64,000 bases of DNA, from assembly GCA_002269645.1 (NCBI GenBank), contig NIVC01000349.1, positions 434,001 through 498,000 of the forward strand. The letters run 5' to 3'. Below, piece by piece: positions 34,188 through 64,000 of this stretch (its first letter is position 1; the number at the start of each line of letters is the position of its first letter). The notes below the pieces were generated by a model that ran no database searches, was not told the DNA's origin, and was given only the letters and a program-made list of their open reading frames with translations. The position numbers and the translations under genes were made by a program. This stretch comes from Macrostomum lignano. Lineage: Eukaryota.

Positions 34188-36653
34188 TCAGTCTGGAGAC
34201 CCCTCGGACTCCGAGCCGGTCGTTCCGCCGCGACATCGCTGCGCCAGAATGTAGAAATACTCGAGCAGCTCGAACGTGCTGACAACGCTGATTCCCAGCC
34301 AGAGCCCCAGAGTTCCTCCAACCTGCGGGATATACGTAGAATAAAAAATTAACATCGAATCTTAATTTTCTGAACGAAAATCTTTATGAATATCAATAGA
34401 GCTATAAGAAAGGCACAGCATATCAATAGATAAACACTGGATCTGCCTCCTATCGAAAGCAATAACAATTATTGTGCTGAAAAATGAAAACTTGTTACCT
34501 CCGGTAGTGCATTTTCGGCGAAAAGTGGCCTTCAAAACATTTTCCATAGATTTCGAGTGTCAAGTCCTGTATATTACGTTGCTTTAATTGTCCTTGGTTA
34601 ATATATTTTAGTTATTAAAGTATTATTTAACACTACGGAATTCTAACCTTGATACATTTTAGACCAAATATCTCAAATCACTTAAAAAAAGAATGCTGCT
34701 CAAAAGTGCCATATATCAAATGTTAAAACAGGATTTACAGAATGTTTTTAGTCCGATTTGAACGGACTTTCGTTAGCTGGATGAATGTCTCGATCAGACA
34801 ACTGTATATATACTTCGACTGAAATGTTGACAGGTGGCAACACTCTCCGCATTTCTAAGGCCAATATGTGTGAAATGTCTCACCTCGGACAGAGCTTCAG
34901 TCCAGTGGTAGCCGGCCTTCTCTTTGTAAACGTCAGCTGCCGGGCTCTGCAAGCTGATGCTGACTGACGCCAGGCTGCGAGACAAAGTGTACCGCTCGAT
35001 GCAACCCGACGCTTGCTTCAAATACAGCTGAATCAGTAAAGTATCGCAATAATAGTAATCCTTATCGCTGTGATTGCAAAAGAAACTCATGCAGTCATCG
35101 TCGTTTAGAAATGGTAAAATTTGGCTGTATTGTCGAGATTGATTCATATTCCTATAGATATGATGCACTTTGCCATCCTCGGGCAGGAACTCGACTCCAT
35201 GTCTCACTTGCGGCACCATCAGGTTCTCCCAGATCTCTTGAATGGCGCTGAACGGGGGCCACCTGCGGCTCTGCTGCCAAGGCCGTTGCTGAGTGAATTG
35301 GCACCACATCCGGTGCTGGAACTCCTTCGCCAGCTCATCGCTTTGCCTCTGTGCGTGCTCAAACCAGTGATCATGGCAGTCAATTCTCTTGAGCACAGCA
35401 TCCGATGGGGTGATCCACTCCTGCGGTGGAGCGAAGTAGCACAGGTCGCTCGTATTCACCGAGAACGGGAGCAGGTGCGAATAGCAGCCGCAGTTGCTGT
35501 GCAGGATGCTCTGCTGTGCCTCGACTACGAAATCGGAGACGGACTTTGAGTAGGCCTTGGTGACCACGTTCAGCGAGGCGTTGGAGAAGTGCTTGACATA
35601 GTTGATGGTTTCGATTGGAGGCTCGGAGCATCTGCGGCTGGGCTTCGACATGAGTCGGTTGTGGATCGGCCTGAGTTTGATGGAGGTGCTGGTGGCTGAG
35701 GCCACGTCCACGAACTCCGTCTCTGCGGTTTGACATGGATTCTCTTGTGTCCGTGATCATGGAACTATTTTCTGTAAATTCTCAAATGAATAAAACTCAA
35801 AAAAGACCTCAATGAAATGATACGTACGGCTCATTGGATAGCTGCGCGCCTCGTGAATAAAAAGTCGCAGTCCTTCTGACTGAGGATCACTGCCTCTCAG
35901 CAACCTGTTCGTCGCATCCTGACCCAAAATTATTCGATTGACGCAGACTCCCGCAGATTCGGAATTTAGGAATTCATAATGATGGATAGACGGTTCGGCA
36001 TAACCATCGGTGAAGAGCACCATGTCGAGCTCGGCTCCCCTGCCCCCAGAACCGCTGGACGACTGCCCCGGGTCCGGGTGGAACGTGTAGCAGCTCCAGA
36101 ACCGGCTGGTCTGGACAAGCGAGAAGTTCCTGTGACTGCAGGGCTCGCTGTTGTAGCGGCAGCTCAGCAGCATGGTCTTATCGAGGTGGGAGATGTCTCT
36201 GGTGTCGCCCGACACCCACATCACGTCCAGGAGCTTCTTGCACACCTTCTCAAGTCGGTATTCGTAGCTTTCATCCGATTCTTGCGGGCGCTTCTTGGTG
36301 TCCTCTTTGAACCAGTGGTCGAAGTTGCCCCAGGATTTATTCAGGTAGTCGTGATAAATATTCCACCTTATTAAGCTAGCAGAAGCGGGCTTAAAGTTGC
36401 AAATTGTGATGTCGGGAAACTGGGCTCGTTCGCTCCCCAGCTTCAGCTGCGACTCAACGGAGTGCTCGGTGAACTTCTGCACCAACTTTGCCAGGTGGAC
36501 GGTGCAGCCGATCAGAGCAGCTACGAACAGAAGCAGCCAGAAGAGCCGTCGAGCTGAGCCTCTGGACAGGAAGATGTGCAGCAAGCCGTGGGTTCTCGTG
36601 ATGCCAGCCACCTCCTGGGCGGCACCGGTCACCGTGCGGAGTCGGTCTTGCAT
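34188..36653 (-). CDS. DEG/ENaC (amiloride-sensitive) channel subunit, paralogue A, 3 exons, 599 aa
   Basis: Exons 36653-35828, 35722-34884 and 34322-34188 join in frame (1800 nt). Motifs: N-terminal THG, TM1 (LFWLLLFVAALIGC), FPDITICN, CRYN..PC, CYTF, GLRLFIH, Cys-rich thumb, TM2 SEVGGTLGLWLGISVVSTFE. Confidence 0.93.
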
Positions 36654-36752
36654 TTTTTACTTTGTGAAGTTTTTGTATACGCGCGTCTAGTTATAGAAAG
36701 AGTACGAATACTGCGATGTTTGCATTTTAATCAGGATGGCTCGTACCAGAAG

Positions 36753-37641
36753 TGCACAATTATGACCATAGACCGATTGCCGCCATCACAGTGTTCAACA
36801 TATAGCTATATGGGTGAATGTCACAAGCACATTGTATCACGCTGGCGCGCGTTAGATGCACGATTTACTGTGCGTCTAATGTAGGTGTCTATGGCAATTT
36901 TCTATCTGAGTAAAGGCAACAAGCGTGCGTCTAACGCGTCAGTTAGAATATTGATTCGCCTTGTCGACATGAAATGCCGGTAGAGCGCAGCTCGGATACA
37001 AATCAACGTGGCTGGAGCAAAGTATTCGCCATTCCTCTTGCGAAGTGAGCCATAGAAGTATCGCAATAGACTGTCGATCTCGCGCGGTGTAGAAGTCGCC
37101 AAATCACGCTGAACTGACGGATGGTTCTCCATGAAGCTCTGCAACTTACCGACATAATATTCGGTAGCCTTTGTCACACTTTTACTAGCAGCGGTGTCCT
37201 CGATTTCGGAAACGAGCTGTTCCAATTCAAGTAGTTCAGCTTCTTCGTCAGGTATCTTCTTGAAAAGTGCCTCCAGAAGATCCTCCTCTTCTCGATCAAT
37301 TGCCGACTCCGGTAGATTATCAGGCTCGTTCAGAATGTCGTCAATCTCATTGGTGGACAAGCCGGAAATCATTTCGTTTGGAAATTTGCTCAGATTCAGA
37401 AGTCTGACTTTAGTTGGTGGCTCAGCCATATTCTCTCACAAGTGATTTTAATTTAACAGCTTCTTATTCCCTTCTTCGCAACACTCAATCAACTTGCGTG
37501 CCTTTCACGCATTTTTGTCTATGGTTAAGACAAATTAACTGAGCGTGCATCTAACGCGCCATCTAAAGTATTAAGCCAACGTAATACAATGCAACTCATA
37601 CATCGATTTTTTGTGCTTAAATGGTCTATGGCACTCGTGCA
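36753..37641 (-). mobile_element. Internally deleted Crypton-like (tyrosine-recombinase transposon) element
   Basis: ORF 37429-36902 encodes SVTKATEYYVGKLQSF...EIDSLLRYFYGSLRKRNGEYFAPATLICIRAALYRHF...INI, the pattern of the Crypton/KCTD1/ZMYM-type N-terminal domain that precedes DUF3504. It has no catalytic domain. Flanking inverted motifs: GCGCGTTAGATGCACG (36846-36862) and CGTGCATCTAACGCGC (37544-37559); CCATAGAC (36766) and GTCTATGG (37624). Confidence 0.72.
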
Positions 37642-37994
37642 AATCGATGTATGAATCCTACAATGAAATAGAAAAAAAAATTATTATTGTTTACTTTTGT
37701 GCCCTTGGGTACACTTGCACCGATAACTACGAGTATATACCAATACCACAGACTTTCTGAGCGCAAGAAAGAGACAGGGACTACTCAATACCAAGTTGTC
37801 CTTGGAAAGAAAGGAAATCCGAGGGAAGCAAAGCAAAGAATGCCACACTACCTATCCTGTAGGCCTGTCTCAGGTCCACCTTGCACATGCATGTACATGC
37901 TCTGGCGCAGCGTCCTACCAAAAGCTGCTTTTGCATGCTTTTCCTGAATCTAAAATAGACAGGTCTGAATCCAATGAGAGCTGCTCTGAGTTGC

Positions 37995-38180
37995 GCGAAG
38001 AAGACTGGTCTGAGTCGGATGAAGACTGGTCTGAGTCGGATGAAGACTGGTCTGAGTCGGATGAAGACTGGTCTGAGTCGGATGAAGACTGGTCTGAGTC
38101 GGATGAAGACTGGTCTGAGTCGGATGAAGACTGGTCTGAGTCGGATGAAGACTGATCTGAGTCGGATGAAGACTGGTCTG
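37995..38180. repeat. 21-bp minisatellite
   Basis: Unit GAAGACTGGTCTGAGTCGGAT, about 8 copies. Confidence 0.95.
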
Positions 38181-38284
38181 GTACAGTACGGGCCTATACA
38201 TTTAAGTCACAGCGCAAAGCTTGACTACTGAGAAGTGGATGGTCTAAAGTTTGGCGTGAAAAACATGAATGGCGGGCAAAGAAA

Positions 38285-44076: not shown

Positions 44077-45801
44077 CTAATCCCCTAATCGAAGTTGCTG
44101 CAGTCCCAGTTCATGACCCCCAGAAGTCCAGTTCCGATATTCAACTCTCAGCGGCTCTCCTATGGAAGGAGAATCCAAAATGCTGTTTTTCATTGCCAGC
44201 CGAATGTCGCACCAGCTGCCAGCACAGCCCGATCCTCTATAAACATGGTCATTTCTGTGTCTAATATTTCCAGGATGTATACCTTGAAAGCTAGTTAAAT
44301 AGAAGATGTCAGCGCTAAAAGAATAAAGCCAGGCAAAAAAGCTGAAATATGAAAATGGGTTTGAATAATCACTGAGGACTGATACAAACTCAGCATTGAT
44401 GCCGCTGCTCCGACTCAGCCTGAAGTACATGGTCCACTCTGCTGCGTTCCAGATCGACTCATTGAATGCCACGGGAGCTCCGACATTGTAGAACTCGCTG
44501 TGATTGAATGGATAAGTTGAGTTCCACTTAAAGCAGGCCCCGTCCTCTGCCGACCTCTCCACGCCGAACTGGTCCTCGATGGCGAAGGTGCGCGGGTCCA
44601 CCAGGTTGTCGAGGCCCCTCCTGAAGTCGAACGCAGCCACGAGGCCGTCCACAGGTGGAGTGACGCCTCCGTCAGGTGCAGAGGTGACGCCTCCGTCAGG
44701 TGCAGAGGTGACGCCTCCGTCAGGTGCAGAGGTGACGCCTCCGTCAGGTGTGGAGGTGACGCCTCCGTCAGGTGCAGAGGTGACGCCTCCGTCAGGTGCA
44801 GAGGTAACGCCTCCGTCAGGTGCAGAGGTGACGCCTCCGTCAGGTGTGGAGGTGCCGTCCGACGCCTCCGTCTTGCACACGAACCTGTGCCTGCTGTGGC
44901 ACCTGTCGCTGCGCAGTCGACCAGCTGACAGCGTGACGCAGTTCACAGTCCAGTCCGCACTGTCCGGGTGTCCAGTCTCCCATGCGGGCAGTTTGTTGTC
45001 GTGTTTCCCTGAGAAATCCGTCCACTGGTAGCAGAGCTCGCGACCCGCACTGTCAGGGAAGCAGGGGTTCAGCTTGATGAGGCCGAGCCACACCGAGTCG
45101 AGCAGCTCTGCCGACTCGCAGCTGTCGATTCCGAAGCTGAGCTTGTTCACAAAGTCCAGCTCAGACTGGGTGAGCACCGACGCCAGCTGCGACGAGTTTC
45201 GCTGGCAGTAGAAGTTGGCCTCGTTGAAGTTGGCCTCAAACTGCGGCATCACGTAGCACTGCTTGTCGTGCAGCCACCAGCCGCTGGGACATCGGCCCTT
45301 CGACCGCCACCACCAGTCGACGAGACTGCTGGAGTTGGCGCTCAACTTGCACACAAACGGGTGCCGCTCGTGATACAGCGAGTTGAGCCACCACTCACCG
45401 TCACTTTGGATCAGAGGCTTGTGAACGCTGTCCAGCTTAGAGAAGTTGTGTCTGTCGAAGCTCCCTACTCCGCCTACGCCGTCCGTCCACCTGTAGCTTG
45501 TAGGGTCGGTCAGACGGTCGAGGTCGGTGCCGAACAAACCGATCCAGGCGTCTCTGCAGTGAGACAGTCGGCCTACCAGTCGGTTCTCTTGCTCACTTTG
45601 GATGGACGCGAGGTGAGCCCGGTGAGACAGACACGTCTGCTCGGCCTGAAACCAGTAGTTCGGCTCGCTGAACCACTTGTAGCATGAGTGAGCTCGGTGT
45701 GTCCAGCCGTGTCCGGGACACTGAGTAGAGGCGGCGCCGGTGAGCAGCAGAGCTGCAGTGGCTGCGGCGAGGCAGGCAGCGAGTAGCTGGCGGTGCTGCA
45801 T
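44077..45801 (-). CDS. Secreted C-type lectin: signal peptide, two CTLDs, 8-aa Thr/Pro repeat linker and a LamG/ConA-like C-terminal domain
   Basis: Single long ORF with a hydrophobic N-terminus (MQHRQLLAACLAAATAALLLTG). CTLD1: CPGHGW..SCYKW..W..AEQTC..HLASI..WIGL..WTDG..FVCK. CTLD2: CPSGWW..CY..ANFYC..LASV..VWLGL..CV..C..FVCK. The linker is (TSAPDGGV)n, encoded by a 24-bp repeat at about 44655-44860. The C-terminal domain call is inference. Confidence 0.85.
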   Translation of the reverse strand: MQHRQLLAACLAAATAALLLTGAASTQCPGHGWTHRAHSCYKWFSEPNYWFQAEQTCLSHRAHLASIQSEQENRLVGRLSHCRDAWIGLFGTDLDRLTDPTSYRWTDGVGGVGSFDRHNFSKLDSVHKPLIQSDGEWWLNSLYHERHPFVCKLSANSSSLVDWWWRSKGRCPSGWWLHDKQCYVMPQFEANFNEANFYCQRNSSQLASVLTQSELDFVNKLSFGIDSCESAELLDSVWLGLIKLNPCFPDSAGRELCYQWTDFSGKHDNKLPAWETGHPDSADWTVNCVTLSAGRLRSDRCHSRHRFVCKTEASDGTSTPDGGVTSAPDGGVTSAPDGGVTSAPDGGVTSTPDGGVTSAPDGGVTSAPDGGVTSAPDGGVTPPVDGLVAAFDFRRGLDNLVDPRTFAIEDQFGVERSAEDGACFKWNSTYPFNHSEFYNVGAPVAFNESIWNAAEWTMYFRLSRSSGINAEFVSVLSDYSNPFSYFSFFAWLYSFSADIFYLTSFQGIHPGNIRHRNDHVYRGSGCAGSWCDIRLAMKNSILDSPSIGEPLRVEYRNWTSGGHELGLQQLRLGD

Positions 45802-46149
45802 TTGCTGAGTCGCCAATGGGAGTCGCTGATTGGAGCGGCCACTTTGAGTTGCAAATTTGAGCAGGCATTGCGAGTCGGCATTTATCCACTCGAGCTGGTG
45901 GGAACTCGGCGCCTGCTACAGCTGCTGGTGAGCCCAAGTTAATTGCCGACAAAGGCGCAGCTTTGGCTACTACGGCGGCGGATGTCAGTAGCAGATCTGA
46001 GGAAAAATATTTTTTATCAGTTTTTGTAAGTAATTGTTTTTTTCGAATGTTAATTTACGACCTCAAGTTGCTTTTTGAGTTTTTTTACTTTTAGATTATA
46101 CCATCTGGCTGCAATCCACGAAGTAATTGCACGATATTATAAAAACAGT

Positions 46150-48222: not shown

Positions 48223-50818
48223 GGCTACCGGACATTTGCCCTCCGGCATTTGCCCTCCGGACATTTGCCCTCCGGCATTTCCCCTCCGGACATTTGCCCT
48301 CGAGGACATTTGCCCTCGGGGACATTTGCCCTCCGGACATTTGCCCTCCGGACATTTGCCCTCGGGGACATTTGCCCTCCGGACATTTGCCCTCCGGACA
48401 TTTGCCCTCCGGACGTTTGCCCTCAAGACATTTCCCCTCTGGAAATGAAATTTCTCCACAATCATGAAACAAAAAAATTTCCCTTCAGTGTGTGTCCAAA
48501 CAAGTAAGTACATGTACACAAATGTACAAGAATTGCGAGAGAAAAGTCTAAAGTCTTAAGCTTTTGAGACACTTAAGTTTTTCTTAACGGTATTATTGTT
48601 TTATTTATTAATATAACGGTTTTCATCAACTTTTTAACAGCAAAGTTTTAAAACAAAGTTTTGAGTTTTTAGGAAACGGTTAAGTTTTTTTGAACGATAT
48701 TATTGTTTTTGTTATCAAGCGCGTCTAGTAAGTATTATCTTGATAATTATTGCGCAGGTTCAGCGAGTGAGTGAGGTGGGAGAAAGTGATAACAGGTCAG
48801 CGGGTCAGCAAAAATAAAAGTAAATCACGATTGAAAAAAAATGCATGTTATGTGCAATATGCGTGAGCGAAGCCTCTTAGGTAGCACAGCAGTGGATGGT
48901 CCGCATGCTCGACAGGCACCTCCAGCCAGGCGTGCTGGTACGTCGCCGCCAATCGCTGCAGCCGCTGGTCGCGCGCCTTCCATACCTGGCGCTGGGCGTC
49001 GGTGCAGCACCGGCTAGCAGGCCATTAATTGAGGTGTTGGTCAGGCCCAGCTGCTTTTTTATCCAATCGGTGTGGCGCCAGATGGTTGGATTGGATGCGG
49101 CTAGCGAGGACGACATGCCCTGGTGGAAGCCTTCGACCTTGTTATTGGTGCGGGGACGAACGGCCATAACGCGCTCATACATATTCCACTTCTCGTGGCC
49201 AAAGCGTGGCGGGCGACGCTGCTGATTACGACGGCGAGGCCGGGCTCCGATGTAAGTCGACTCGAAGTAGGTATCAATTAAATCGCTAAGCCAGTCGTGA
49301 TTGTCGGCTAGCCATTGTGCCAGCAGCTCAAATGCAGCAATGATGTCGGGCAGGGGCACATAAGCCAGTGCTGTGAGCATCTTAGCCAGCACCCTGTTGT
49401 CTTGGCTGGCCTGGTACTGCTGTAGCGCCCGCTGGTCTTGCTGAATGTGCCGGAAAACGGCCTGGCTGAAGTGAAAATAGCACCCACTAGTCTCTACATT
49501 GGGGTACACCTCATGAGCTGCATTCATCGCTGCCATTTCAAAGTCTGTGAGTAGCCTTTGTGGACCCTCTGACTGCGCCAGCTGGCCCACCTTGCGGTAC
49601 AACCGCTCCATCGTGACTTGCGTCTTGTCGGGCAGCAGCGCCAGCACCAGCGGCTCAAGCGACCCGTTTACGTCGCCGTGCAGGCTGTAAAGCTGGGCGA
49701 AGAGCGCCGGCGCCGCGTCAAAGGTTCCATCACCCTGCCACTCCTCACTTCGGCCCAGCAGACGGATGGAGCGATCAGTCGCAAAAATCAAGATGCGCTC
49801 ATTGCCTGGCTCTTCTAGAATGCTGTCCCACTTGAGCACATCTTCTGCCCGGCCATTCAGCTCCATCACCGTGAAGCGCTCTGGGAAGACGATCTCGCCT
49901 CGGCTGGCTGGCTGTACCAGATGCTCGCCTTCGCGCTGGCGACGGATAGTCCGCTTGGCATTTTCAACAGAGAAAAGTGCCTCTGCAGCTTCGGACATGC
50001 CACCCGCTGCCTCCTGCAGCACTTGCACAGTCGTCTCCACTGTCTCACCGGCACGTGTCCTAATTCGGTCGTAAACTTGCAGGCGCTCGATCTTACCATC
50101 GTCGCCTTCATGCGTGTGTTCACCTAGGCGCCGGCGAATGACAGCTGGCTGCGTCGTGTCCGGGAAAGAGAGCGTATACACAGCGGCCCGGCAGCGGCCG
50201 CCTCTGTACAACTCGCAGACCCAGCGCCACTCGCCTTCGCCTGTAACTCGCTTGTCGGTGTAAAACCTGCGGCCATTTTCAACCAAAACATCTTTGCCTT
50301 TAGAGCTCTTAATGTAAAAAGCCATGATTTCTTTCGGAGGAATCTTGTATTCTTTAAGAGCCAAGATCAATCACTTATATAGTAAAATGGTCAGACTTTC
50401 GGCCATAGACTGTTGACAGTACAGGTAAGGCTGGGGATAGGGTAGGGCGCGGGTATATATTGCTTACTAGAAAAGGATGAGTTGTTGGCTGGAGAAGAAC
50501 CTGATGGATGCAAGAGGCGGGAGGATGAGGTTGGTGCTGGAGGAACGACGGGTGGGTACAGGAGGAGGTGAGGTGAGTAATGTGCGAGGGGGTAAATTTG
50601 CAGAGGGCAAATGTGCGGAGGGGAAATGTCCGGAGGGCAAATGTCCGGAGGGCAAATGTCCCCGAGGGCAAATGTCCCCGAGGGAAATGTCCGGAGGGCA
50701 AATGTCCGGAGGGGAAATGTCCCGGAGGGCAAATGTCCGGAGGGCAAACGCCGCCGAGGGGAAGTGCCGGAGGGCAAGTGCCGGAGGGGAAGTGCCGGAG
50801 GGCAAATGTCCGGAAGCG
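48223..50818 (-). mobile_element. Full-length Mutator-like (MULE) DNA transposon with tandem-repeat TIRs and 9-bp TSD
   Basis: GCCAGGCCG is duplicated at 48214-48222 and 50819-50827. The ends are inverted arrays of an approximately 15-bp GGACATTTGCCCTCC unit (about 48223-48440 and 50600-50818). Contains a transposase ORF. Confidence 0.93.
48848..50325 (-). CDS. FLYWCH-MULE transposase with a frameshift near the C-terminus
   Basis: FLYWCH-like N-terminus (KGKDVLVENG.RF...WRWVC...C...H.H), WQGDGTF, LTDFE, GCYFHF, PRTNNKVEGFH. The expected tail (ARDQRLQRL...LLCYLRGFAH, stop at 48848) is in a shifted frame from about 48995-49002. Confidence 0.88.
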
Positions 50819-51992
50819 GCCAGGCCGGCTAGTCCAATCAACCTGTCACGCCGTAGGCGACTTCACCTGGCAGGGCACTTTGCTAAACTGGCTGAGCTTG
50901 CAGATGACACCATCTGCTGAAACGACAGTCTGCTGGTTTATAAAGTAATAAATCCTATTAAGTATTAACGTTTATCAAATAAAGCTGATGGTTGTAAACA
51001 GTTAGTCATTTCATTTCAATAAATGCATCTTTGTTTAAATATTGTTTCAGTACTTCAGTTGATTATTTTTTTTGGTCTCACTAAAAAGCACAGTTTTTTG
51101 TTTTTGTTACTATTGTAAGTTCAAAAGTAACATGTAGTTTATTCAAAAAAATTACATTCTTTTTTCCTCCCAGCAAGGGTGGCGCAGATTGCTAGTTGGC
51201 GCTAAAATCTTTCCACGGGGTTTTCGTGACCCTCAAATATTTGGCTTAGCGACTGGAAACTGCCTGGGAATGGGACTGCTACCCCAACCTTTTTCCGAAT
51301 CTTTTCGGGATTATGCGACAATGTCATTGATCATGCAGGGTGTTGTGGCTCCGACACAAGACGCCTCCCTCCGGAAGAAAATGCTGGCTACGTCACCAGC
51401 TGGAGCGCACTCGGCGTTTCTGTTGGGGCACAATGTGACGCAGTTTTTACGCTCGAATAATTTAATAAATTTGTCAGCCTGCATTGTTGTAGTTGTTGAC
51501 TGCACATACAGTCAGAAGATCGGTGTCGCAGGAATGCCGAGTTGGCTCAGACTCTTCTCGACTCTCAGACCCTGAGAAAAGAGTCAAGAGTCAGTGAGCA
51601 GAGATATCAAGTCGACCAGCCATTGCTGTTAAAAGCAACAAGACGAAACCAGCCCGACATGTCAAGAACTCTTAGACAAATAATCAGTCAGCACCACTTG
51701 AATTGGACCTGAACTAAGTCAGGAAACTTTAGACCAAAGACATCCTCAGCGCTGCCGCCAGAGAGAAGCAGAGAGGCACAGGAGGAAATTTATTGACTCG
51801 ATTGACTATGCAACATGTCTATGGCTACCGCCAGTTCTTTTTACCCCGATGCATTTAAAGAAAACGGTCCATACACTTTAGCTCGCGCCACGCGTAGACT
51901 AAGCTAACTACAAACAAGTTTGATCTTATCAGTACTAATTGCTACGAACATCTGGGTTTTTGAGCAGGATGCTTGAAAAACCAAAGAGAAAA

Positions 51993-54148
51993 ATGCGAGC
52001 CCGACTCCGCACGGTGACCGGTGCCGCCCAGGAGGTGGCTGGCATCACGAGAACCCACGGCTTGCTGCACATATTCCTGTCCAGAAGCACAGCTCGACGG
52101 CTCTTCTGGCTGCTTCTGTTCGTAGCTGCCCTGATCGGCTGCACCGTCCACCTGGCCAAGTTGGTGCAGAAATTCACCGAGCACTCCATTGAGTCGCAGC
52201 TGAAGCTGAGGAGCAAACGAGCCCAGTTTCCCGACGTCACAATTTGCAACTTTAAGCCCGCTTCTTCATCTTTGACTCGGTTTGATGTTTATCACGACTA
52301 CTTGAAAAAATATTGGGGTAAATTCGACAACTGGTTCCAGGAGGACACCAAGAAGCGCCCGCAAGAATCGGATGAAAGCTACGAAGACCGACTTGAGACG
52401 GTGTGCAAGAAGCTCCTGGACGTGATGTGGGTGTCGGGCGACACCAGAGACATCTCCCACCTCGATAAGACCATGCTGCTGAGCTGCCGCTACAACAACG
52501 AGCCCTGCAGTCACAAGAACTTCTCGCTTGTCCAGACCAGCCGGTTCTGGAGCTGCTACACGTTCCACCCGGACCCGGGGCAGTCGTACAGCGGTCCTGG
52601 GGGCAGGGGAGCCGAGCTGGACATGGTGCTCTTCACCGATGGCTACACTGTGTCCTCTGAGCCTCATAATGACTTCCTAAATTCCGATTCTGTGGGAGTC
52701 TGCTTCAAGCGACTAATTGCGCGTCAAGGTGCGACGAACAGGTTGCTGAAAAGCAGTGATCCTCAGTCGAAAGGACTGCGACTTTTTATTCACGAGGCGC
52801 ACAGCTACCCGATGAGCCGTACGTATCATTTAATGGAGATCTTATTTGAGTTATTTTAACATTTATTGGAACATTTATAGAAAATAGTTACGTGATAACG
52901 GACACTGGAAAATCCATGCCAAACTGCAGAGACGGAGTTTGTGGACGTGGCCTCAGCCACCAGCACCTCCATCAAACTCAGGCCGGTCCACAACCGACTC
53001 ATATCGACGCCGAGCCGCAGATGCTCCGAGCCTCCAATCGAAACCATCAACTATGTCAGGCACTTCTCCAACGCCTCGCTGAACGTGGTCACCAAGGCCT
53101 ACTCAAAGTCCGTCTCCGATTTCGTAGTCGAGGCACAGCAGAGCATCCTGCACAGCAACTGCGGCTGCTATTCGCACCTGCTCCCGTTCTCGGTAAATAC
53201 GAGCGACCTGTGCTACTTCGCTCCACCGCAGGAGTGGATCACCCCATCGGATGCTGTGCTCAAGAGAATTGACTGCCATGACATCTGGCTCGAGCACGCA
53301 CAGAGGAAAAGCGAGGAGCTGGCGAAGGAGTTCCAGCACCGGATGTGGTGCCAGTTCACTCAGCAACGGCCTTGGCAGCAGAGCCGCAGGTGGCCCCCGT
53401 TCAGCGCCGTTCAAGAGATCTGGGAGAACCTGATGATGCCCCCGCAATACAGACATGGAGTCGAGTTCCTGCCCGAGGATGGCAAAGAGCATCACATATT
53501 CAGGAATATGAATGAATCTCGACAATTAGGGCAAATTTTGGTGTTTCTTACGCAAGACTATAACTGCTTTAGCTTCTTCTGCAGAAATTCGACCAGGAGT
53601 TATTATTACGAATGCAACATTTCTTTGATGCTGCAGCATCTGAAAAACATGTCCTACTGCATCTACCAAAAAACTTTGGCTGACACCCTGGCATCAGTCA
53701 GCATCAGCTTGCAGAGCCCGGGAGCTGACGTTTACAAAGAGAAGGCCGGCTACCACTGGACTGAAGCTCTGTCCGAGGTGAGGCATTTCACACATTGGCC
53801 TTAGAAATGCGGAGAGTGTTCCTGCTAATCAACATTGCAGTCGAAGTAGTTGTCTCGGGAGCTTATCAAACCAACTAATTCTCAAGTAACTTTAATGTTT
53901 TAGCAAAGAATACTGCATCAAGGACTGTCTATTTATCAAACGCGATGTTTGACGCTATTTCGAGTTTCGCATGCTCGATCAATGATTGGTTGGTGCCGTT
54001 TGAAATCCCACAGGTTGGAGGAACTCTGGGGCTCTGGCTGGGAATCAGCGTTGTCAGCACGTTCGAGCTGCTCGAGTTTTTCTACATCCTGGCGCAGCGC
54101 TGCCGCGGCGGAACGACCGGCTCGGAGTCCGAGGGGTCTCCAGACTGA
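51993..54148 (+). CDS. DEG/ENaC channel subunit, paralogue B, 3 exons, 602 aa
   Basis: Exons 51993-52818, 52930-53777 and 54014-54148 join in frame, with the same intron positions and motifs as copy A (FPDVTICN, GGTLGLWLGIS). An in-frame upstream ATG at 51969 is possible. Confidence 0.93.
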
Positions 54149-54700: not shown

Positions 54701-55149
54701 CGCATATTTTTGTACTGTAATAACTCGTAATATAAGAAAGAATCGCGGTCTTGTCGCCGATGCGTGTCGCCTCGGCGCTTTGATCGCTGCTTAATTTGCC
54801 GCGCCGACCCGGTCATGAGCCGACATATCGGCTGCTTGGCTTACGAGTCAGGTCGGAATGCGAGCCGGGTTGAGTTTCGGTCACCCTGTAGACCACGACA
54901 ATTCTGTTCGGATCACCTTGCAGAAGCTCCATCCGGTGACCGCGAGTGCATCGTCTCGTCCTCGTTGAGAGTGCAGTTTGGATCGACAGTTGCTTGTGAT
55001 GGATCTCCCGGCTCGCCAGGCAGTCATCAAACTCGTGGCCAACTGCAGGGGTCCATTTTCGGTTTTAAGGCTCTTCAAGATGCCCCAACTTGACCAGATG
55101 ACATCGAGCAAGTCGACGACTAATCTTAGTTAGGACTGATTAGAGAAGC

Positions 55150-56790
55150 GCTGTGTCACACCCTCTGTCTGCTGTGTCTCAACCTCTATCCGCTGTGTCT
55201 CACCCTCAATCCGCTGTGTCTCACCCTCAATCCGCTGTGTCTCACCCTCAATCCGCTGTGTCTGACCCTCAATCCGCTGTGTCTCACCCTCAATCCGCTG
55301 TGTCTGACCCTCAATCCGCTGTGTCTCACCCTCAATCCGCTGTGTCTCACCCTCAATCCGCTGTGTCTGACCCTCAATCCGCTGTGTCTGACCCTCAATC
55401 CGCTGTGTCTGACCCTCAATCCACTGTGTCTGACCCTCAATCCGCTGTGTCTCACCCTCAATCCGCTGTGTCTGACCCTCAATCCGCTGTGTCTGACCCT
55501 CAATCCGCTGTGTCTGACCCTCAATCCACTGTGTCTGACCCTCAATCCGCTGTGTCTCACCCTCAATCCGCTGTGTCTGACCCTCAATCCGCTGTGTCTC
55601 ACCCTCAATCCGCTGTGTCTGACCCTCAATCCGCTGTGTCTGACCCTCAATCCGCTGTGTCTCACCCTCAATCCGCTGTGTCTCACCCTCAATCCGCTGT
55701 GTCTGACCCTCAATCCGCTGTGTCTGACCCTCAATCCGCTGTGTCTGACCCTCAATCCACTGTGTCTGACCCTCAATCCGCTGTGTCTCACCCTCAATCC
55801 GCTGTGTCTGACCCTCAATCCGCTGTGTCTCACCCTCAATCCGCTGTGTCTCACCCTCAATCCGCTGTGTCTCACACTCAATCCGCTGTGTCTGACCCTC
55901 AATCCGCTGTGTCTGACCCTCAATCCGCTGTGTCTGAACCTCTATCTGCTGTGTCTCACCCTCAATCCGCTGTGTCTCACCCTCAATCCGCTGTGTCTCA
56001 CCCTCAATCCGCTGTGTCTCACCCTCAATCCGCTGTGTCTCACCCTCAATCCGCTGTGTCTCACCCTCAATCCGCTGTGTCTCAATCCCTCACCCTCAAT
56101 CCGCTGTGTCTCACCCTCAATCCGCTGTGTCTGACCCTCAATCCGCTGTGTCTGACCCTCAATCCGCTGTGTCTCACCCTCAATCCGCTGTGTCTGACCC
56201 TCAATCCGCTGTGTCTCACCCTCAATCCGCTGTGTCTCACCCTCAATCCGCTGTGTCTCACCCTCAATCCGCTGTGTCTCACCCTCAATCCGCTGTGTCT
56301 CACCCTCAATCCGCTGTGTCTCACCCTCAATCCGCTGTGTCTCACCCTCAATCCGCTGTGTCTCACCCTCAATCCGCTGTGTCTCACCCTCAATCCGCTG
56401 TGTCTCACCCTCAATCCGCTGTGTCTCACCCTCAATCCGCTGTGTCTCACCCTCAATCCGCTGTGTCTCACCCTCAATCCGCTGTGTCTCACCCTCAATC
56501 CGCTGTGTCTCACCCTCAATCCGCTGTGTCTGACCCTCAATCCGCTGTGTCTCACCCTCAATCCGCTGTGTCTCACCCTCAATCCGCTGTGTCTCACCCT
56601 CAATCCGCTGTGTCTCACCCTCAATCCGCTGTGTCTCACCCTCAATCCGCTGTGTCTCACCCCCAATCCGCTGTGTCTCACCCTCAATCCGCTGTGTCTC
56701 ACCCTCAATCCGCTGTGTCTCACCCTCTATCTGCTGTGTCTCACCCTCAATCCGCTGTATTTAACCCTCTATCTGCTGTTTCTCAGGAGA
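55150..56790 (+). repeat. 21-bp minisatellite (about 78 copies), left arm of an inverted pair
   Basis: Unit T(C/G)ACCCTCAATCCGCTGTGTC. Confidence 0.97.
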
Positions 56791-59148: not shown

Positions 59149-60159
59149 TTACAAGAAAATTTTATTGATGGTTTCTTCCGGCAGATTCGTATTAGAAACC
59201 GCCACGGCTCTGACCACACCATAAAGCATGCAGGTGCCGTCATACCGCCAGCCCACATAGATGCAGGCTCCGGCTTGGTTGAAGCTGTTCGTCCGAGCGA
59301 AGACGCCGGCAGTCGGTAGAAACTTTGCTCCATAGAAGAAGCGAGTCAGGTTCTGCTGCCTCCTGAATGAGACGCCAGCGATGAAGAACTCGTTCGGGTC
59401 CGCAGGTAGCACCGAGCTGGTCTGGAATCTGGCGAAGTAACCTGGGTTCAGGAAGAGGGCGCGACTCACTCCGGTCATCACTGAGTACTCTTGCAGGTGG
59501 TCGAGCTTGCTGCCGGATCCGATGCAGCTGCTCAGTTCTAGAAAGCTAGCTAAACCTGGCGTTCTCTTCAGGTGCAGCACCCAGGTGTAGGACACCGTGA
59601 AGTCCAGACCTGTGGGGTCGTCCACCCACAGCCGAGACGAGACTCCGTCCATGCGAGCGCCTTCGTTCGTCCACGAGACACCGCTGGACTTCATGGGGTT
59701 CCTCTGTCCCTCGGAGCCGCACACCAGGTTCTCCAGCGCCGGTCCCCTGTCTCCGACCCACACAGCGCTGAAGTGCTCGTTCGCAGCGATCGCGTCGTAC
59801 TCCGAGTCCACCACGGTCTCGCAGGTGCTCTCAGCGGCCACTCCCTCAGACGGTGTCGTGGAGGTCATGTTGAGCAGGCGGCACACCTCACCGAAGCGGA
59901 ACAGCGCACACGAGGCGTCTCGCTTGCTCCGCTGCACCAGGCCGACGCTGCCGAGACGGAACGACCGACTCGACACGAAGCAGTCGAGCATTGAAGAGGA
60001 GCGCCCGGAGCTAAGCTGCCACACGGACTTTGACTTGTTCAGGCAGTGGTTAGTGCTGAGCACAGTGTATTTGGTGATGGCGGAGCGGCATTCAGCGTGA
60101 GCTAGCGGCAGGCTCCCGAGAAGCAGGAACAGCAGCATCTGCTGATGCGGTTCGGCCAT
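59149..60159 (-). CDS. Secreted protein with a Cys-containing (PAN-like?) N-terminal part and a LamG/ConA-like domain, 336 aa
   Basis: ATG with signal peptide (MLLFLLLGSLPLAHA), GC-rich codon usage and an intact ORF. C-terminal pattern LDFTVSYTWVLHLKR...FFIAGV...IYVGW...GVVRAVAVSNTNLPEETI resembles LamG-like folds (inference). Confidence 0.7.
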   Translation of the reverse strand: MAEPHQQMLLFLLLGSLPLAHAECRSAITKYTVLSTNHCLNKSKSVWQLSSGRSSSMLDCFVSSRSFRLGSVGLVQRSKRDASCALFRFGEVCRLLNMTSTTPSEGVAAESTCETVVDSEYDAIAANEHFSAVWVGDRGPALENLVCGSEGQRNPMKSSGVSWTNEGARMDGVSSRLWVDDPTGLDFTVSYTWVLHLKRTPGLASFLELSSCIGSGSKLDHLQEYSVMTGVSRALFLNPGYFARFQTSSVLPADPNEFFIAGVSFRRQQNLTRFFYGAKFLPTAGVFARTNSFNQAGACIYVGWRYDGTCMLYGVVRAVAVSNTNLPEETINKIFL

Positions 60160-60589
60160 CTCGATGCGGTGAAGATTTGGAGTTTGAAGAGCGGCTCTAT
60201 GCTACATACTTATTTGAATATTTGGCGTGTTTTTGCATTAGCGATAAATTGAAAATCGTCATGAAACCTCTGATTGAGTGCTCTTGATCCAATTTTCCTA
60301 AACTTGAATGGTGATTGATTGACTGATTGAAAACCATGCACTTGAACCCACCATTTATTTCGTTTCATTTCCCAACAACGCACCAATTCAAGATGTGCAT
60401 AAATTTGTGAGTGTCAAATTTGCCTATTGCCTAAGTGGCAATTGATGGCATTATCTAGTTTCCCACTGATCTCAGATGAGATGGATTAAATTAATTTCTA
60501 ACATTTTTTACCTAAAAAAACATCTTATTTAGCCATAGAACTTTTAAGTGTCGCTTTAGTGATCACGAGGTGTTGTTGCTGGGTTGAAG

Positions 60590-61200
60590 TTCAGAAACAG
60601 CGGGTGGAGGGTCAGACACAGCGGGTGGAGGGTCAGACAGCGGATTGAGGGTCAGACACAGCGGGTGGAGGGTCAGACACAGTTGATTGGGGGTCAGACA
60701 CAGCGGATTGGGGGTCAGACACAGCGGATTGGGGGTCAGACACAGCGGATTGGGGGTCAGACACAGCGGATTGGGGGTCAGACAGCGGATTGGGGTCAGA
60801 CAGCGGATTGGGGGTCAGACACAGTGGATTGGGGGTCAGACACAGCGGATTGGGGGTCAGACACAGCGGGTGGAGGGTCAGACACAGTTGATTGGGTGTC
60901 AGACACAGCGGGTGGAGGGTCAGACACAGTGGATTGAGGGTCAGACACAGCGGATTGGGTGTCAGACACAGCGGATTGGGTGTCAGACACAGCGGGTGGA
61001 GGGTCAGACACAGTGGATTGAGGGTCAGACACAGCGGATTGGGTGTCAGACACAGCGGATTGGGTGTCAGACACAGCGGGTGGAGGGTCAGACACAGTGG
61101 ATTGAGGGTCAGACACAGCGGATTGGGTGTCAGACACAGCGGGTGGAGGGTCAGACACAGTTGATTGGGGGTCAGACACAGCGGATCGAGGGTCAATTGA
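60590..61200 (-). repeat. Same 21-bp minisatellite family in inverted orientation (about 29 copies)
   Basis: Unit GAGGGTCAGACACAGCGGATT is the reverse complement of the 55-57 kb unit. Confidence 0.95.
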
Positions 61201-61489
61201 GGGTCAAGCTGACAATTAAGTAACCCACTGTAACACGCTTATGCAGTTTGAATTTATGTCGAATTTGTTAAAAATTGTAAAACAAAATGGTGTACTAAAT
61301 CCAGCAAAAGAATTTTGACAAAGATAAATTTTTAAATATTCAAAACAAAGGATGTAGGAAAAGTATTTAGCTGTGAGTTGGTGTATTTTGGCGATAGGAA
61401 CACATTGGTTCGTAGTTTTTAGGTACATAAAAGGTCAAACAAATTGCGCACTTGTTAATATTCGAAAAACTGAATCCCATATTGAAGAC

Positions 61490-62940
61490 ACTGTCATGCT
61501 GTGACAGTAAAATACAGAGATTGATCATGCTGTGGCAGTAAATTACAGAGATTGATCATGCTGTGGCAGTAAATTACAGAGATTGATCATGCTGTGACAG
61601 TAAAATACAGAGATTGATCATGCTGTGGCAGTAAATTACAGAGATTGATCATGCTGTGACAGTAAAATACAGAGATTGATCATGCTGTGACAGTAAATTG
61701 CAGAGATTGATCATGCTGTGACAGTAAATTACAGAGATTGATCATGCTGTGACAGTAAAATACAGAGATTGATCATGCTGTGACAGTAAATTACAGAGAT
61801 TGATCATGCTGTGACAGTAAATTACAGAGATTGATCATGCTGTGACAGTAAAATACAGAGATTGATCATGCTGTGGCAGTAAATTACAGAGATTGATCAT
61901 GCTGTGACAGTAAAATACAGAGATTGATCATGCTGTGACAGTAAATTACAGAGATTGATCATGCTGTGACAGTAAATTACAGAGATTGATCATGCTGTGA
62001 CAGTAAAATACAGAGATTGATCATGCTGTGACAGTAAATTACAGAGATTGATCATGCTGTGACAGTAAATTACAGAGATTGATCATGCTGTGGCAGTAAA
62101 TTACAGAGATTGATCATGCTGTGACAGTAAATTACAGGGATTTATCCTTCTGTGACAGTAAATACAGAGATTGATCATGCTGTGACAGTAAATTACAGAG
62201 ATTTATCCTTCTGTGACAGTAAATTACAGAGATTGATCATGCTGTGACAGTAAATTACAGAGATTGATCATGCTGTGGCAGTAAATTACAGAGATTGATC
62301 ATGCTGTGGCAGTAAATTACAGAGATTGATCATGCTGTGGCAGTAAATTACAGAGATTGATCATGCTGTGACAGTAAATTACAGAGATTGATCATGCTGT
62401 GGCAGTAAATTACAGAGATTTATCCTTCTGTGACAGTAAATTACAGGGATTTATCCTTCTGTGACAGTAAATTACAGAGATTTATCCTTCTGTGACAGTA
62501 AATACAGAGATTGATCATGCTGTGACAGTAAATTACAGAGATTTATCCTTCTGTGACAGTAAATTACAGAGATTGATCATGCTGTGGCAGTAAATTACAG
62601 AGATTGATCATGCTGTGGCAGTAAATACAGAGATTGATCATGCTGTGACAGTAAATTACAGAGATTGATCATGCTGTGACAGTAAATTACAGAGATTGAT
62701 CATGCTGTGGCAGTAAATTACAGAGATTTATCCTTCTGTGACAGTAAATTACAGAGATTTATCCTTCTGTGACAGTAAATTACAGAGATTGATCAGGCTG
62801 TGACAGTAAATTACAGGGATTGATCATGCTGTGACAGTAAATTACAGAGATTTATCCTTCTGTGACAGTAAATTACAGGGATTTGTCATGCTGTGACAGT
62901 AAATTACAGAGATTTATCATGCAGTGACAGTAAATTACAG
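61490..62940. repeat. 31-bp minisatellite (about 47 copies) downstream of ENaC-C
   Basis: Unit TGCTGTGACAGTAAATTACAGAGATTGATCA. Confidence 0.97.
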
Positions 62941-63045
62941 GGATTTTCTTGTATTTTTTTGCTGTGCCTGTGATAAAGAAGCAGCCATTGAAACTGAACC
63001 CAGTGACCGATCCAAATCGCTATGCAGAGAGCTGCCGGTTCGAAC

Positions 63046-64000
63046 TCAGGACTCTTCTTCAGTGTCCGAGTCGTCATCATTTCTCCTGCACCTCTGCACC
63101 AGAATATAGATGAACTCAAGCAGCTCAAATGTGCTCACGACGCTGATGCCGAGCCAGAGTCCCAGAGTTCCTCCGACCTGCGGAATATCGAGAAAAAATT
63201 GAAAATTGGTACAGCGCAGCTCAGTATCTCTATGGCAACCAGAGCGAGACAAAGTTGCTGGGGCCGATTTTAAATGAGCATGCAATTTGGTCTGAGCAAC
63301 AGCCTCAAATGCGGGAATATTGCAACCGGAATGCAACTCTCACCTCCGACAGGGCCTCGGTCCAGTGGTATTTGTACTTCTCTTCGTAGACGTCCGCTGC
63401 AGGATTCTGCAAGCTGATGCGGACTGCTGCCAGGTTTTTGGCCAATTCGTCACGCTTAACGCAAATCGTACTCGACATAACCAAATCTTTTAAACTTATT
63501 CCTTTTCTGTCGCACTTTTCTACAAGTCCCAGCAGTATTAGTTGCAATACCTGTCTGGTATAGTTACCTGTATTATTCCTATAGATATGATGCACTTTGC
63601 CATCCTCGGGCAGGAACTCGACTCCATGTCTGACTTGCGGCACCATCAGGTTCTCCCAGATCTCTTGAATGGCGCTGAACGGGGGCCACCTGCGGCTCTG
63701 CTGCCAAGGCCGTTGCTGAGTGAACTGGCACCACATCCGGTGTTGGAACTCCTTCGCCAGCTCTTGGCTTTGCCTCTGTGCGTGCTCAAACCAGTGATCA
63801 TGGCAGTCAATTCTCTTGAGCACAGCATCCGATGGGGTGATCCACTCCTGCGGTGGAGCGAAGTAGCACAGGTCGCTCGTATTCACCGAGAACGGGAGCA
63901 GGTGCGAATAGCAGCCGCAGTTGCTGTGCAGGATGCTCTGCTGTGCCTCGACTACGAAATCGGAGACGGACTTTGAGTAGGCCTTGGTGACCACGTTCAG
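63046..64000 (-). CDS. DEG/ENaC channel subunit, paralogue C, 3' part (gene starts beyond window end)
   Basis: Partial exon 64000-63344 and terminal exon 63177-63046 (VGGTLGLWLGISVVSTFELLEF...EEES stop). The thumb region is nearly identical to copy A. Confidence 0.9.

What the first reader, a model, noticed from the sequence alone, without database searches (positions are those of the whole stretch)
34884..64000. DEG/ENaC paralogues carry a swappable hypervariable knuckle cassette inside near-identical genes; copy A is a C/B mosaic
Seen: A (35150-35580) and C (63575-64000) differ at only about 5 positions in about 420 bp. Immediately after the shared I[YF]RN the proteins diverge: A 34974-35147 (58 aa), B 53508-53687 (60 aa) and C 63434-63574 (47 aa, with a different Cys pattern and not alignable by eye). 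They rejoin at LASVSISLQ / LAAVRISLQ. Upstream of the cassette A shares C-type residues (HWFEHAQRQS, LMVPQVRHG, GKVHHIYRN) where B has IWLEHAQRKS, LMMPPQYRHG, GKEHHIFRN. From the cassette onward A shares the cassette type, start of the last intron, terminal exon and 3' UTR with B. Established: in ASIC/ENaC topology the segment just before the beta11-beta12/TM2 stretch is the knuckle, a surface domain that contacts the neighbouring subunit's finger. Inference: paralogue recombination or gene conversion plus diversifying selection is shuffling a variable extracellular module, as expected for a diversifying chemo-, peptide- or mechanoreceptor repertoire.
Basis: partly seen in the sequence, partly recalled or inferred. 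Interest (0 to 1): 0.82.

Follow-up and report, generated by a model that had tools for sequence, protein, structure and literature searches.

The report
Flatworm sodium-channel paralogues homogenised except variable islands
Three neighbouring flatworm (Macrostomum lignano) DEG/ENaC channel genes are kept almost identical by copying between gene copies, except for three old, divergent surface segments. The reported 'swappable cassette' is one of these segments, so this is an ordinary though clean case of concerted evolution.

Summary
A and C differ at 5 of 427 bases just upstream of the segment. The segment is 58, 60 and 47 codons long in A, B and C. Downstream of it, A matches B and not C. 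The A/B/C site pattern switches exactly at the segment's 5' edge (Fisher p = 6e-13).

The window is M. lignano contig NIVC01000349.1. Five more genomic copies show two old lineages: type I (A, B, D) and type II (C, E, F, G). These differ in HV1, HV2, intron 1, the cassette, the tail and the UTRs, and A is type I in all of them.

The conserved blocks have synonymous divergence of 0.03-0.13 between all copies. The tail has about 1.0 between types, and the A-B cassette also has 1.0. The cassette is therefore old at silent sites too. Its flanks have been homogenised by gene conversion.

dN/dS in the cassette is 0.4-0.6 and does not differ from the flanks. Most 'C-type' residues in A are simply the family majority state. 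Only a patch of about 14-60 bp next to the cassette, plus one other site, is specific to A and C.

The cassette lies inside exon 2 and sits at the knuckle position. The three variable islands fall where FaNaC builds its peptide pocket. That match rests on position alone.

The parts
35828..36653 (-). Gene A exon 1: start codon, HG motif, TM1, FPDITICN, and variable islands HV1 and HV2
   Evidence: Translation and splice sites. The spliced product is 599 aa, intact, and hits PF00858.
36318..36392 (-). HV1 of A (about aa 88-112). Aligns with the alpha1 finger helix of Aplysia FaNaC (Y156 region).
   Evidence: Sliding pS/pN. Exon-1 alignment. HMMER alignment. Y156 lies in alpha1 and is reported to take part in FMRFamide recognition (10.1101/2023.02.01.526556).
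35844..36026 (-). HV2 of A (about aa 210-270). Lies at the position of the beta6-beta7 loop.
   Evidence: A-B 31/179 differences, A-C' 83/179. Alignment to FaNaC and ASIC.
34884..35722 (-). Gene A exon 2: homogenised core, cassette and beta11-beta12
35148..35722 (-). Exon-2 core of A. It differs from C at 9/577 sites, from E at 16, from B at 25 and from D at 26. dS to all paralogues is 0.03-0.12.
35154..35167 (-). Patch GTGCATCATATCTAT (V-H-H-I-Y). Three of its sites are shared only by A and the C-type copies. It is bounded by an A-versus-C difference at 35205 and by the cassette at 35147. Most likely a short C-to-A conversion tract.
   Evidence: The A-like proteins P0001 and P0013 have the type I state KEHHIF here.
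34974..35147 (-). Cassette (HV3) of A: 58 aa, 4 Cys, 2 N-glycosylation sequons, GC 0.41
34188..34322 (-). Gene A last exon (TM2 with GIS filter, type I tail CRGGTTGSESEGSPD, stop codon)
51993..52818 (+). Gene B exon 1
   Evidence: Equals P0003 apart from a longer predicted N-terminus.
52930..53777 (+). Gene B exon 2
53508..53687 (+). Cassette (HV3) of B: 60 aa, 4 Cys, 4 sequons
54014..54148 (+). Gene B last exon
63344..64000 (-). Gene C exon 2, cut by the window end. The remaining 148 bp were read from L002.
63434..63574 (-). Cassette (HV3) of C: 47 aa, 2 Cys, type II
63046..63177 (-). Gene C last exon (type II tail CRRNDDDSDTEEES)

Best explanation
A, B and C belong to a Macrostomum-specific DEG/ENaC subfamily. 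At least 8 genomic copies lie on 6 contigs, and they evolve in concert.

Short-tract interlocus gene conversion keeps the conserved blocks near-identical between all copies, including at silent sites. These blocks are the N-terminus and TM1, the middle of exon 1, and the 577-bp core of exon 2.

Three AT-richer islands escape this homogenisation: HV1, HV2 and the cassette (HV3). Between the two old lineages, the tail, intron 1 and the UTRs escape it as well. All of these keep the old divergence.

Conversion tracts stop at the island edges because homology stops there.

Gene A is a type I gene, sister to B and D. Its exon-2 core has most recently exchanged sequence with its neighbour C, which lies 28 kb away in the same orientation. 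The last exchanged tract ends at the cassette.

Shown: the divergence contrast, the incongruent site patterns, and the type assignment. Inferred: that conversion is the process, that the direction was C to A, and that the islands persist because divergence blocks heteroduplex formation and/or because selection keeps the surface segments different.
For: Identity of the window: 100% identical to NIVC01000349.1. Named family hits are M. lignano.

Synonymous divergence (Nei-Gojobori):
- Exon-2 core: dS 0.034-0.126 for every pair among A, B, C', D and E.
- Tail, type I against type II: dS 0.84-1.16. Within a type: 0.02-0.17.
- Cassette: A-B 1.03, A-D 0.64, B-D 0.49.
- Contrast tests: A-C' core vs tail p = 1e-14; A-B flanks vs cassette p = 2e-9.

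The tail includes TM2, where pN is about 0.02, yet pS there is 0.35-0.68 between types. Protein constraint alone therefore does not suppress silent change in this family.

Old duplicates: intron 1 K is 0.15-0.20 within type I and the intron is not alignable between types. Upstream flanks are not alignable at all.

Reticulation: 232 of 465 informative site pairs in the core are incompatible, and PHI permutation gives p = 0.03 at short range. A shares minority states with E, C', B, D and G in turn.

Composition: GC3 is 0.77-0.79 in the core and 0.39-0.55 in the cassettes, as GC-biased conversion would produce.

Timescale: A and its near-copy A' (P0001, P0013) differ at 16-17 residues, of which only 1 lies in the cassette. 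The cassette is therefore not hypermutating.
Against: - No second species is available, so the classical test could not be run. That test asks whether paralogues group within a species in the conserved blocks while the cassettes group by orthology.
- PHI is only marginal at wider ranges (p = 0.07-0.11).
- High GC3 could reflect codon usage rather than biased conversion.
- The assembly is PacBio-based, from a hidden-polyploid genome. Copies F, G and C' carry frameshifts, so some single-site patchwork could be consensus or polishing error.
- HV1 and HV3 give different trees within type I, so variable blocks were not always immune to exchange.
Confidence: 0.7

Rival explanations
1. The cassette is a mobile module that is swapped between otherwise near-identical genes by recombination or conversion, and it is driven apart by diversifying selection.
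For: There is a sharp breakpoint at the cassette edge. Within type I, HV1 groups A with D (6/54 differences) while the cassette groups B with D (34/173, against 57-62 for A), Fisher p = 0.002. dN/dS is 1.2-2.4 in the E/F/G cassette comparisons.
Against: - The cassette is internal to exon 2 and has no splice or repeat boundaries.
- Cassette type is fully linked to HV1, HV2, intron 1, tail and UTR type across 7 genomic copies.
- Silent sites in the cassette are as diverged as replacement sites predict. omega is 0.39-0.63 in intact pairs, and N:S does not differ from the flanks.
- F and G carry frameshifts, and G lacks an acceptor AG, so omega near or above 1 there fits decay.
- The A and A' cassettes differ at 1 of 58 residues.
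Confidence: 0.15
2. Assembly artefact. Copy A, or the patchwork in the conserved blocks, comes from collapsed or cross-polished paralogues or homeologues in the Mlig_3_7 assembly.
For: The genome holds near-identical duplicated segments. C and C' have identical exons but flanks only 97.6-98.5% identical. Frameshifts occur in C', F and G, one of them in a run of T.
Against: - A has HV1, HV2 and a cassette that match neither B nor C, so it cannot be a B/C chimera.
- A UniRef protein from a different gene-model set, P0014, equals A at every diagnostic residue.
- The tenfold contrast in dS is seen on six contigs and cannot be made by polishing.
Confidence: 0.07
3. Constraint at the nucleotide level, with no conversion. 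The conserved blocks stay identical because silent sites are themselves selected, through codon bias or an embedded RNA or DNA element.
For: GC3 is 0.77-0.79 in the core. Other reading frames are open over long stretches.
Against: Half of the informative site pairs in the core are mutually incompatible, which constraint does not produce. The TM2 exon is just as conserved at the protein level and also GC3-rich (0.65-0.73), yet it has dS near 1 between types. Core distance tracks linkage, with A-C on one contig the closest pair.
Confidence: 0.05

Closest known systems
Concerted evolution of multigene families by interlocus gene conversion, with divergent regions that escape homogenisation
   Same: Abrupt changes in silent divergence along the gene. 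Different trees for different segments. Tract ends that coincide with the loss of homology. Higher GC3 in the homogenised parts.
   Different: I found no description of this for DEG/ENaC channels or for M. lignano in the searchable literature. Here the pattern involves dispersed copies on several contigs of a recently duplicated genome.
FMRFamide-gated sodium channels (FaNaC), the best solved-structure match (7yvb, E = 1.5e-26)
   Same: DEG/ENaC fold markers and a GIS filter. In FaNaC1 the peptide pocket is built from alpha1-alpha3 of the finger, the beta6-beta7 loop, and alpha6 (knuckle) of the neighbouring subunit (PMC11026163). HV1, HV2 and HV3 fall at these three positions in the HMMER alignments.
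   Different: Identity is low. Residues about 320-510 do not align to any solved chain. The cassette is 47-60 aa with 2-4 Cys, where FaNaC and ASIC have a short helical knuckle. No ligand is known. Other M. lignano genes near the FaNaC branch did not respond to the peptides tested (PMC9234716), but those are different genes.
Families with conserved flanks and a hypervariable core, such as the Plasmodium 2TM families (rifin, stevor, Pfmc-2TM) or conotoxin precursors
   Same: A short, exposed hypervariable stretch sits between highly conserved flanks in a large paralogous family.
   Different: In those families the variable part shows excess replacement change. Here silent and replacement divergence rise together and omega stays below 1. 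The comparison comes from the literature list and my own knowledge, not from a test.

Membership tests
DEG/ENaC (Pfam ASC, PF00858) | Significant full-length match to the family profile | tested here: met
   E = 2.8e-53, residues 19-577 on profile positions 5-455 of 455. PDB hits are FaNaC, ASIC and ENaC.
DEG/ENaC (Pfam ASC, PF00858) | Two transmembrane helices, an N-terminal HG motif, a post-TM1 FPxxTxCN motif, and a G/S-x-S filter in TM2 | tested here: met
   Read directly from the translation: THG at residues 21-23, TM1 RRLFWLLLFVAALIGCTVHLAKLV, FPDITICN, and GLWLGISVVSTFELLE with GIS.
DEG/ENaC (Pfam ASC, PF00858) | Trimeric, amiloride-sensitive Na+ channel activity | not testable with these tools
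   Needs expression and electrophysiology.
Knuckle domain of ASIC/ENaC/FaNaC (alpha6-alpha7 between beta10 and beta11) | Segment immediately N-terminal of beta11 | tested here: met
   The profile alignment places LAxVSISLQ...YHW on ASIC1 beta11-beta12. The last third of the cassette falls on the alpha6/alpha7 stretch, with low posterior probability there.
Knuckle domain of ASIC/ENaC/FaNaC (alpha6-alpha7 between beta10 and beta11) | Helical surface domain that contacts the neighbouring subunit's finger | tested here: inconclusive
   The AlphaFold2 model of B built from 8 sequences failed (mean pLDDT 36.4, pTM 0.29). Its helices at residues 479-535 cannot be trusted. Sequons and even Cys counts fit an exposed extracellular segment.
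Interlocus gene conversion / concerted evolution | Silent divergence between paralogues changes abruptly along the gene | tested here: met
   dS is 0.03-0.13 in the core, against 0.5-1.0 in the cassette and 0.84-1.16 in the tail between types.
Interlocus gene conversion / concerted evolution | Segment trees disagree, with an excess of incompatible sites | tested here: met
   Fisher p = 6e-13 for A/B/C. 232 of 465 site pairs are incompatible. PHI p = 0.03 at w = 3 and 0.07-0.11 at wider ranges.
Interlocus gene conversion / concerted evolution | Paralogues within a species are closer than orthologues between species in the converted blocks | not tested
   Only M. lignano sequences were found.
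Exchangeable cassette / module shuffling | Discrete unit with its own boundaries (an exon or flanking repeats) | tested here: not met
   The cassette lies inside the 839-nt exon 2, with no GT/AG or repeat boundaries.
Exchangeable cassette / module shuffling | The same cassette type is found on different gene backbones | tested here: not met
   Cassette type is fully linked to HV1, HV2, intron 1 and tail type across the A, B, D and C, E, F, G groups. There is only a weaker incongruence inside type I.
Diversifying (positive) selection on the cassette | dN/dS above 1, or N:S raised over the flanks | tested here: not met
   omega is 0.39-0.63 for the intact type I pairs A-B, A-D and B-D. N:S against the flanks gives p = 0.16 and 0.46. 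omega above 1 occurs in the E-F, E-G and F-G pairs, each of which includes at least one frameshifted copy. Site models were not run.

The most novel reading that the evidence does not exclude
The three islands that resist homogenisation are HV1 (finger alpha1), HV2 (the beta6-beta7 loop) and HV3 (the knuckle, contributed by the neighbouring subunit). [quoted passage not shown] The family would then be a natural library of pockets on a constant gating and pore scaffold. Heteromeric assembly would combine the HV3 of one paralogue with the HV1 and HV2 of another, multiplying the number of specificities. Gene conversion would keep the scaffold interchangeable, and selection would protect the pocket-forming islands.
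Probability: 0.25. Interest if true: 0.65.

Novelty: new member of a known kind. Interest (0 to 1): 0.38.

Why it matters
For genome annotation, this is a warning about three-sequence comparisons in a homogenised family. They can make an ordinary gene look like a mosaic, because the odd copy (here B) polarises the pattern.

For DEG/ENaC biology, the family gives a natural map of which extracellular segments are free to differ on a fixed scaffold. Those segments coincide in position with the peptide pocket of FaNaC. That suggests concrete chimera experiments for orphan flatworm channels.

For M. lignano, it documents ectopic conversion between dispersed paralogues in a recently duplicated genome. 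This matters for read mapping, for the specificity of RNAi and in-situ probes, and for counting genes.

Tried and rejected
- Structure prediction of B from the 8-sequence family alignment gave pLDDT 36, so no fold search was run.
- A second protein search with a profile that included a nematode homologue added only two partial M. lignano models. No deeper alignment could be built.
- Look-up of the genomic locus of the A-like protein P0001 found nothing on record.
- I considered the cassette being a retained intron and rejected it. All seven cassettes have lengths that are multiples of three and are open in frame. They keep Cys, 'RQ' and sequon positions and lack GT/AG ends. The database model P0008, which splices across C's cassette, runs into a frameshifted last exon.
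- I considered targeted hypermutation of the cassette and rejected it. A and A' differ at 1 of 58 cassette residues, and C and C' at none.
- Literature searches for M. lignano DEG/ENaC conversion or hypervariable DEG/ENaC regions found nothing specific.
Full report
**What the window is.** The window is eukaryotic. Window 41969-64000 is 100% identical over 22,032 bases to GenBank contig NIVC01000349.1 of assembly GCA_002269645.1 (Macrostomum lignano). The window therefore corresponds to record positions 434001-498000. All named homologues are M. lignano proteins.

**The genes.**
- Gene A is on the minus strand, with exons 36653-35828, 35722-34884 and 34322-34188. It encodes an intact 599-aa protein.
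- Gene B is on the plus strand, with exons 51993-52818, 52930-53777 and 54014-54148. It encodes 602 aa and equals database protein P0003 apart from a longer predicted N-terminus.
- Gene C is on the minus strand and is cut by the window end. Exon 2 runs from 63344 to beyond 64000 and the last exon is 63177-63046.
- A matches Pfam ASC (PF00858) at E = 2.8e-53 over residues 19-577. It has the HG motif, FPDITICN after TM1, and a GIS filter in TM2.
- The best solved relatives are Aplysia FaNaC (E = 1.5e-26) and ASIC1.
- A and B are not simple tandem copies. A C-type lectin gene and a FLYWCH-MULE transposase ORF lie between them.

**Check of the observation.**
- A 35147-35573 and C 63574-64000 differ at 5 of 427 bases. 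B differs from C at about 5% over the same stretch.
- After I[YF]RN the three genes carry 174, 180 and 141 in-frame bases that align poorly or not at all. They rejoin at LASVSISLQ / LAAVRISLQ.
- Downstream, A resembles B: 3/92 and 4/135 differences in the two exon segments, a shared intron start, and a 3' UTR 93.5% identical. A differs from C at 19/92 and 40/132.
- Over the whole exon-2 core, which includes 148 bp of C read from L002 beyond the window end, the informative sites are AC|B 20, AB|C 4. Within the window alone the counts are AC|B 17, AB|C 2. After the cassette they are AB|C 54, AC|B 2. Fisher p = 6e-13, and the switch lies between 35154 and 35140.
- The cassette is internal to the 839-nt exon 2. 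It is not a separate exon.

**Adding paralogues changes the reading.** I fetched five more genomic copies from the same assembly:
- C' (L001, another contig). Its exons 2 and 3 are identical to C, while the flanks are 97.6-98.5% identical.
- D (L003), E (L004), F (L005) and G (L006).

Every slowly homogenised marker splits the family into two old lineages.

| Marker | Type I (A, B, D) | Type II (C, E, F, G) |
|---|---|---|
| Intron 1 | about 105-111 nt, alignable within the type | longer, with CCCATGCCAAACCAGTCTCACAA-like repeats |
| Cassette | 4 Cys, starts MN[QE]SRQ | 2 Cys |
| Tail | ...CRGGTTGSESEGSPD | ...CRRNDDDSD... |

HV1 and HV2 are also distinct between the types. A is type I in all of these markers.

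**Three variable islands.** Sliding windows of silent and replacement differences show three islands in A: residues about 88-112 (HV1), 210-270 (HV2) and 462-524 (HV3, the cassette). Between them, silent differences are close to zero, even between type I and type II genes.

**Silent-site divergence decides between the models** (Nei-Gojobori estimates).
- Exon-2 core: dS is 0.034 (A-C') to 0.126 for all pairs, including across types.
- Tail (rest of exon 2 plus last exon): dS is 0.84-1.16 between types and 0.02-0.17 within a type, with omega about 0.2.
- Cassette: A-B dS 1.03 and dN 0.44; A-D 0.64 and 0.40; B-D 0.49 and 0.19. omega is 0.39-0.63.
- The cassette is therefore as old at silent sites as at replacement sites, while both of its flanks are about ten times younger. 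A-B flanks against cassette gives p = 2e-9. A-C' core against tail gives p = 1e-14.
- The N:S ratio in the cassette does not differ from the flanks (p = 0.16 and 0.46).
- omega above 1 appears only among E, F and G. F and G carry frameshifts in exon 2, and G lacks an AG before its last exon. Relaxed constraint explains those values.
- The TM2 exon is the most conserved part of the protein, yet pS there is 0.35-0.68 between types. Protein constraint therefore does not explain the silent identity of the core.
- Intron 1 within type I has K = 0.15-0.20. Upstream flanks, and the 3' UTR of D, cannot be aligned. The duplicates are old.

**Signs of conversion in the conserved blocks.**
- In the exon-2 core, 232 of 465 pairs of informative sites are mutually incompatible. 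The homoplasy index is lower for neighbouring sites than in permutations: p = 0.03 at a range of 3 sites, 0.07-0.11 at wider ranges. This fits many short tracts.
- In exon 1, A shares minority states in turn with E (three sites at the 5' end), C', B, D and G.
- GC3 is 0.77-0.79 in the core and 0.39-0.55 in the cassettes.
- Core distance is smallest for A-C, which lie on the same contig 28 kb apart in the same orientation: 9/577. A-B and A-D are 25-26/577.

**Is A a C/B mosaic?** Only in a narrow sense.
- Of the 20 core sites where A = C and B differs, 13 carry the family majority state in A and C, so B is the deviant copy. At several of these sites B shares its state with G. Three sites are split evenly. 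Only four are specific to A and C: window 35640, 35160, 35157 and 35155.
- Three of those four lie in GTGCATCATATCTAT, 7-20 bases upstream of the cassette. This patch is bounded upstream by an A-versus-C difference at 35205.
- In the conserved blocks of exon 1, A is no closer to C' than to B, D or E.
- The A-C affinity is thus confined to the exon-2 core. That is the one block of A-C homology enclosed by a type-specific intron on one side and a type-specific cassette on the other.
- UniRef holds two A-like proteins, P0001 and P0013. They have the A cassette (1 difference in 58 residues) but the type I states KSTPS and KEHHIFRN. A third protein, P0014, equals A at every aligned residue apart from one junction residue (Q276E) and model gaps.
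- Three C-type copies carry VHHIYRN (C, C', P0020), against one of the A-type copies. I therefore infer short C-to-A conversion tracts.
- P0014 also argues against A being an assembly chimera. So does the fact that A's HV1, HV2 and cassette match neither B nor C.

**What remains of the shuffling idea.** Within type I, HV1 groups A with D (6/54 differences, against 17/54 to B). The cassette groups B with D (34/173, against 57-62 to A). The start of the last intron groups A with D. The last exon and 3' UTR group A with B. The HV1-versus-cassette contrast is significant (p = 0.002). Old exchanges that moved whole variable blocks between close paralogues are therefore likely. None is seen between the two deep types. 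Nothing in A, B or C requires a cassette swap.

**Where the cassette sits.**
- The AlphaFold2 model failed (mean pLDDT 36.4), so there is no structural test.
- A family profile searched against PDB sequences aligns LAxVSISLQ...YHW...GGTLGLWLGIS with beta11, beta12 and TM2 of ASIC1. It aligns the last third of the cassette with the alpha6/alpha7 stretch, at low posterior probability.
- It is 47-60 residues long with 2 or 4 Cys and 1-4 N-x-S/T sequons, and the first sequon is conserved. This fits an exposed extracellular segment.
- HV1 aligns with the alpha1 helix of Aplysia FaNaC, around Y156. That residue is reported to take part in FMRFamide recognition (10.1101/2023.02.01.526556). HV2 aligns with the beta6-beta7 loop.
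- In Malacoceros FaNaC1 the peptide pocket is formed by alpha1-alpha3a, the beta6-beta7 loop, and alpha6 of the adjacent subunit (PMC11026163).
- The three islands thus correspond in position to the three walls of that pocket. This is an inference from low-confidence alignment, not a tested result.
- Three other M. lignano channels near the FaNaC branch gave no response to the peptides tested (PMC9234716). Those are different genes.

**Verdict.** The 'swappable cassette under diversifying selection' reading is not supported. The pattern is concerted evolution of a lineage-specific DEG/ENaC family, with three old divergent islands, plus a short recent C-to-A conversion tract that ends at the cassette. 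The kind of process is well known. Its occurrence in this channel family, and the match between the islands and the FaNaC pocket, give it moderate interest.

**Caveats.** The data come from one species and one strain. The assembly is PacBio-based, from a genome with recent large-scale duplication. The pairwise dN/dS estimates are near saturation in the cassette. No usable structure model was obtained.

Noticed in passing
window 48877-50370 (-): A 497-aa ORF with FLYWCH zinc-finger and MULE transposase domains lies between genes A and B. It is a Mutator-like transposon or a domesticated copy.
   Followed up: partly
window 44077-45816 (-): An ORF with a C-type lectin domain followed by a proline-rich, cornifin-like repeat. 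In the public annotation it is called as a 390-aa gene.
   Followed up: partly
window 36902-37429 (-): A 175-aa ORF directly upstream of gene A with a weak QRICH1-domain hit (E = 1.7e-4, below the curated cut-off). Its nature is unknown.
   Followed up: partly
window 127-2928 (-), 30736-31617 (+), 12442-13074 (+): Other gene fragments in the window: CFAP54 N-terminal domain, a calcineurin-like metallophosphoesterase, and a HAD-hydrolase fragment.
   Followed up: partly
window 9147-9817, 11283-12376, 23550-25164, 26318-27356, 55149-56785, 60580-61195, 61494-62946: Many long tandem-repeat arrays. The array at 55149-56785 has an inverted relative at 60580-61195, so the B-C intergenic region is flanked by inverted satellite blocks.
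   Followed up: no
L001 (NIVC01000038.1) about 6000-6100; proteins P0008 and P0020: The C-type copies on other contigs have a 1-nt frame shift in a run of T inside HV1, so their gene models start at MEIFWGNF and lack TM1. This is either a PacBio indel error or the C-type genes are pseudogenes. The same models also splice across the cassette into a shifted last exon.
   Followed up: partly
L005 (F) and L006 (G), exon 2: Paralogues F and G carry frameshifting indels in the conserved exon-2 core. G also has ACG instead of AG before its last exon. They are probably pseudogenes or carry assembly errors.
   Followed up: partly
L003 13184-13359: A 176-bp fragment of the exon-2 core (82% identical), in reverse orientation, lies about 1 kb downstream of paralogue D. 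It is a gene relic that could act as a conversion donor.
   Followed up: no
window 36653-36664 / 51982-51993: Similarity between A and B begins only about 11 bases upstream of the ATG and ends about 130 bases after the stop codon. Homogenisation or duplication covers essentially the transcribed unit only.
   Followed up: partly
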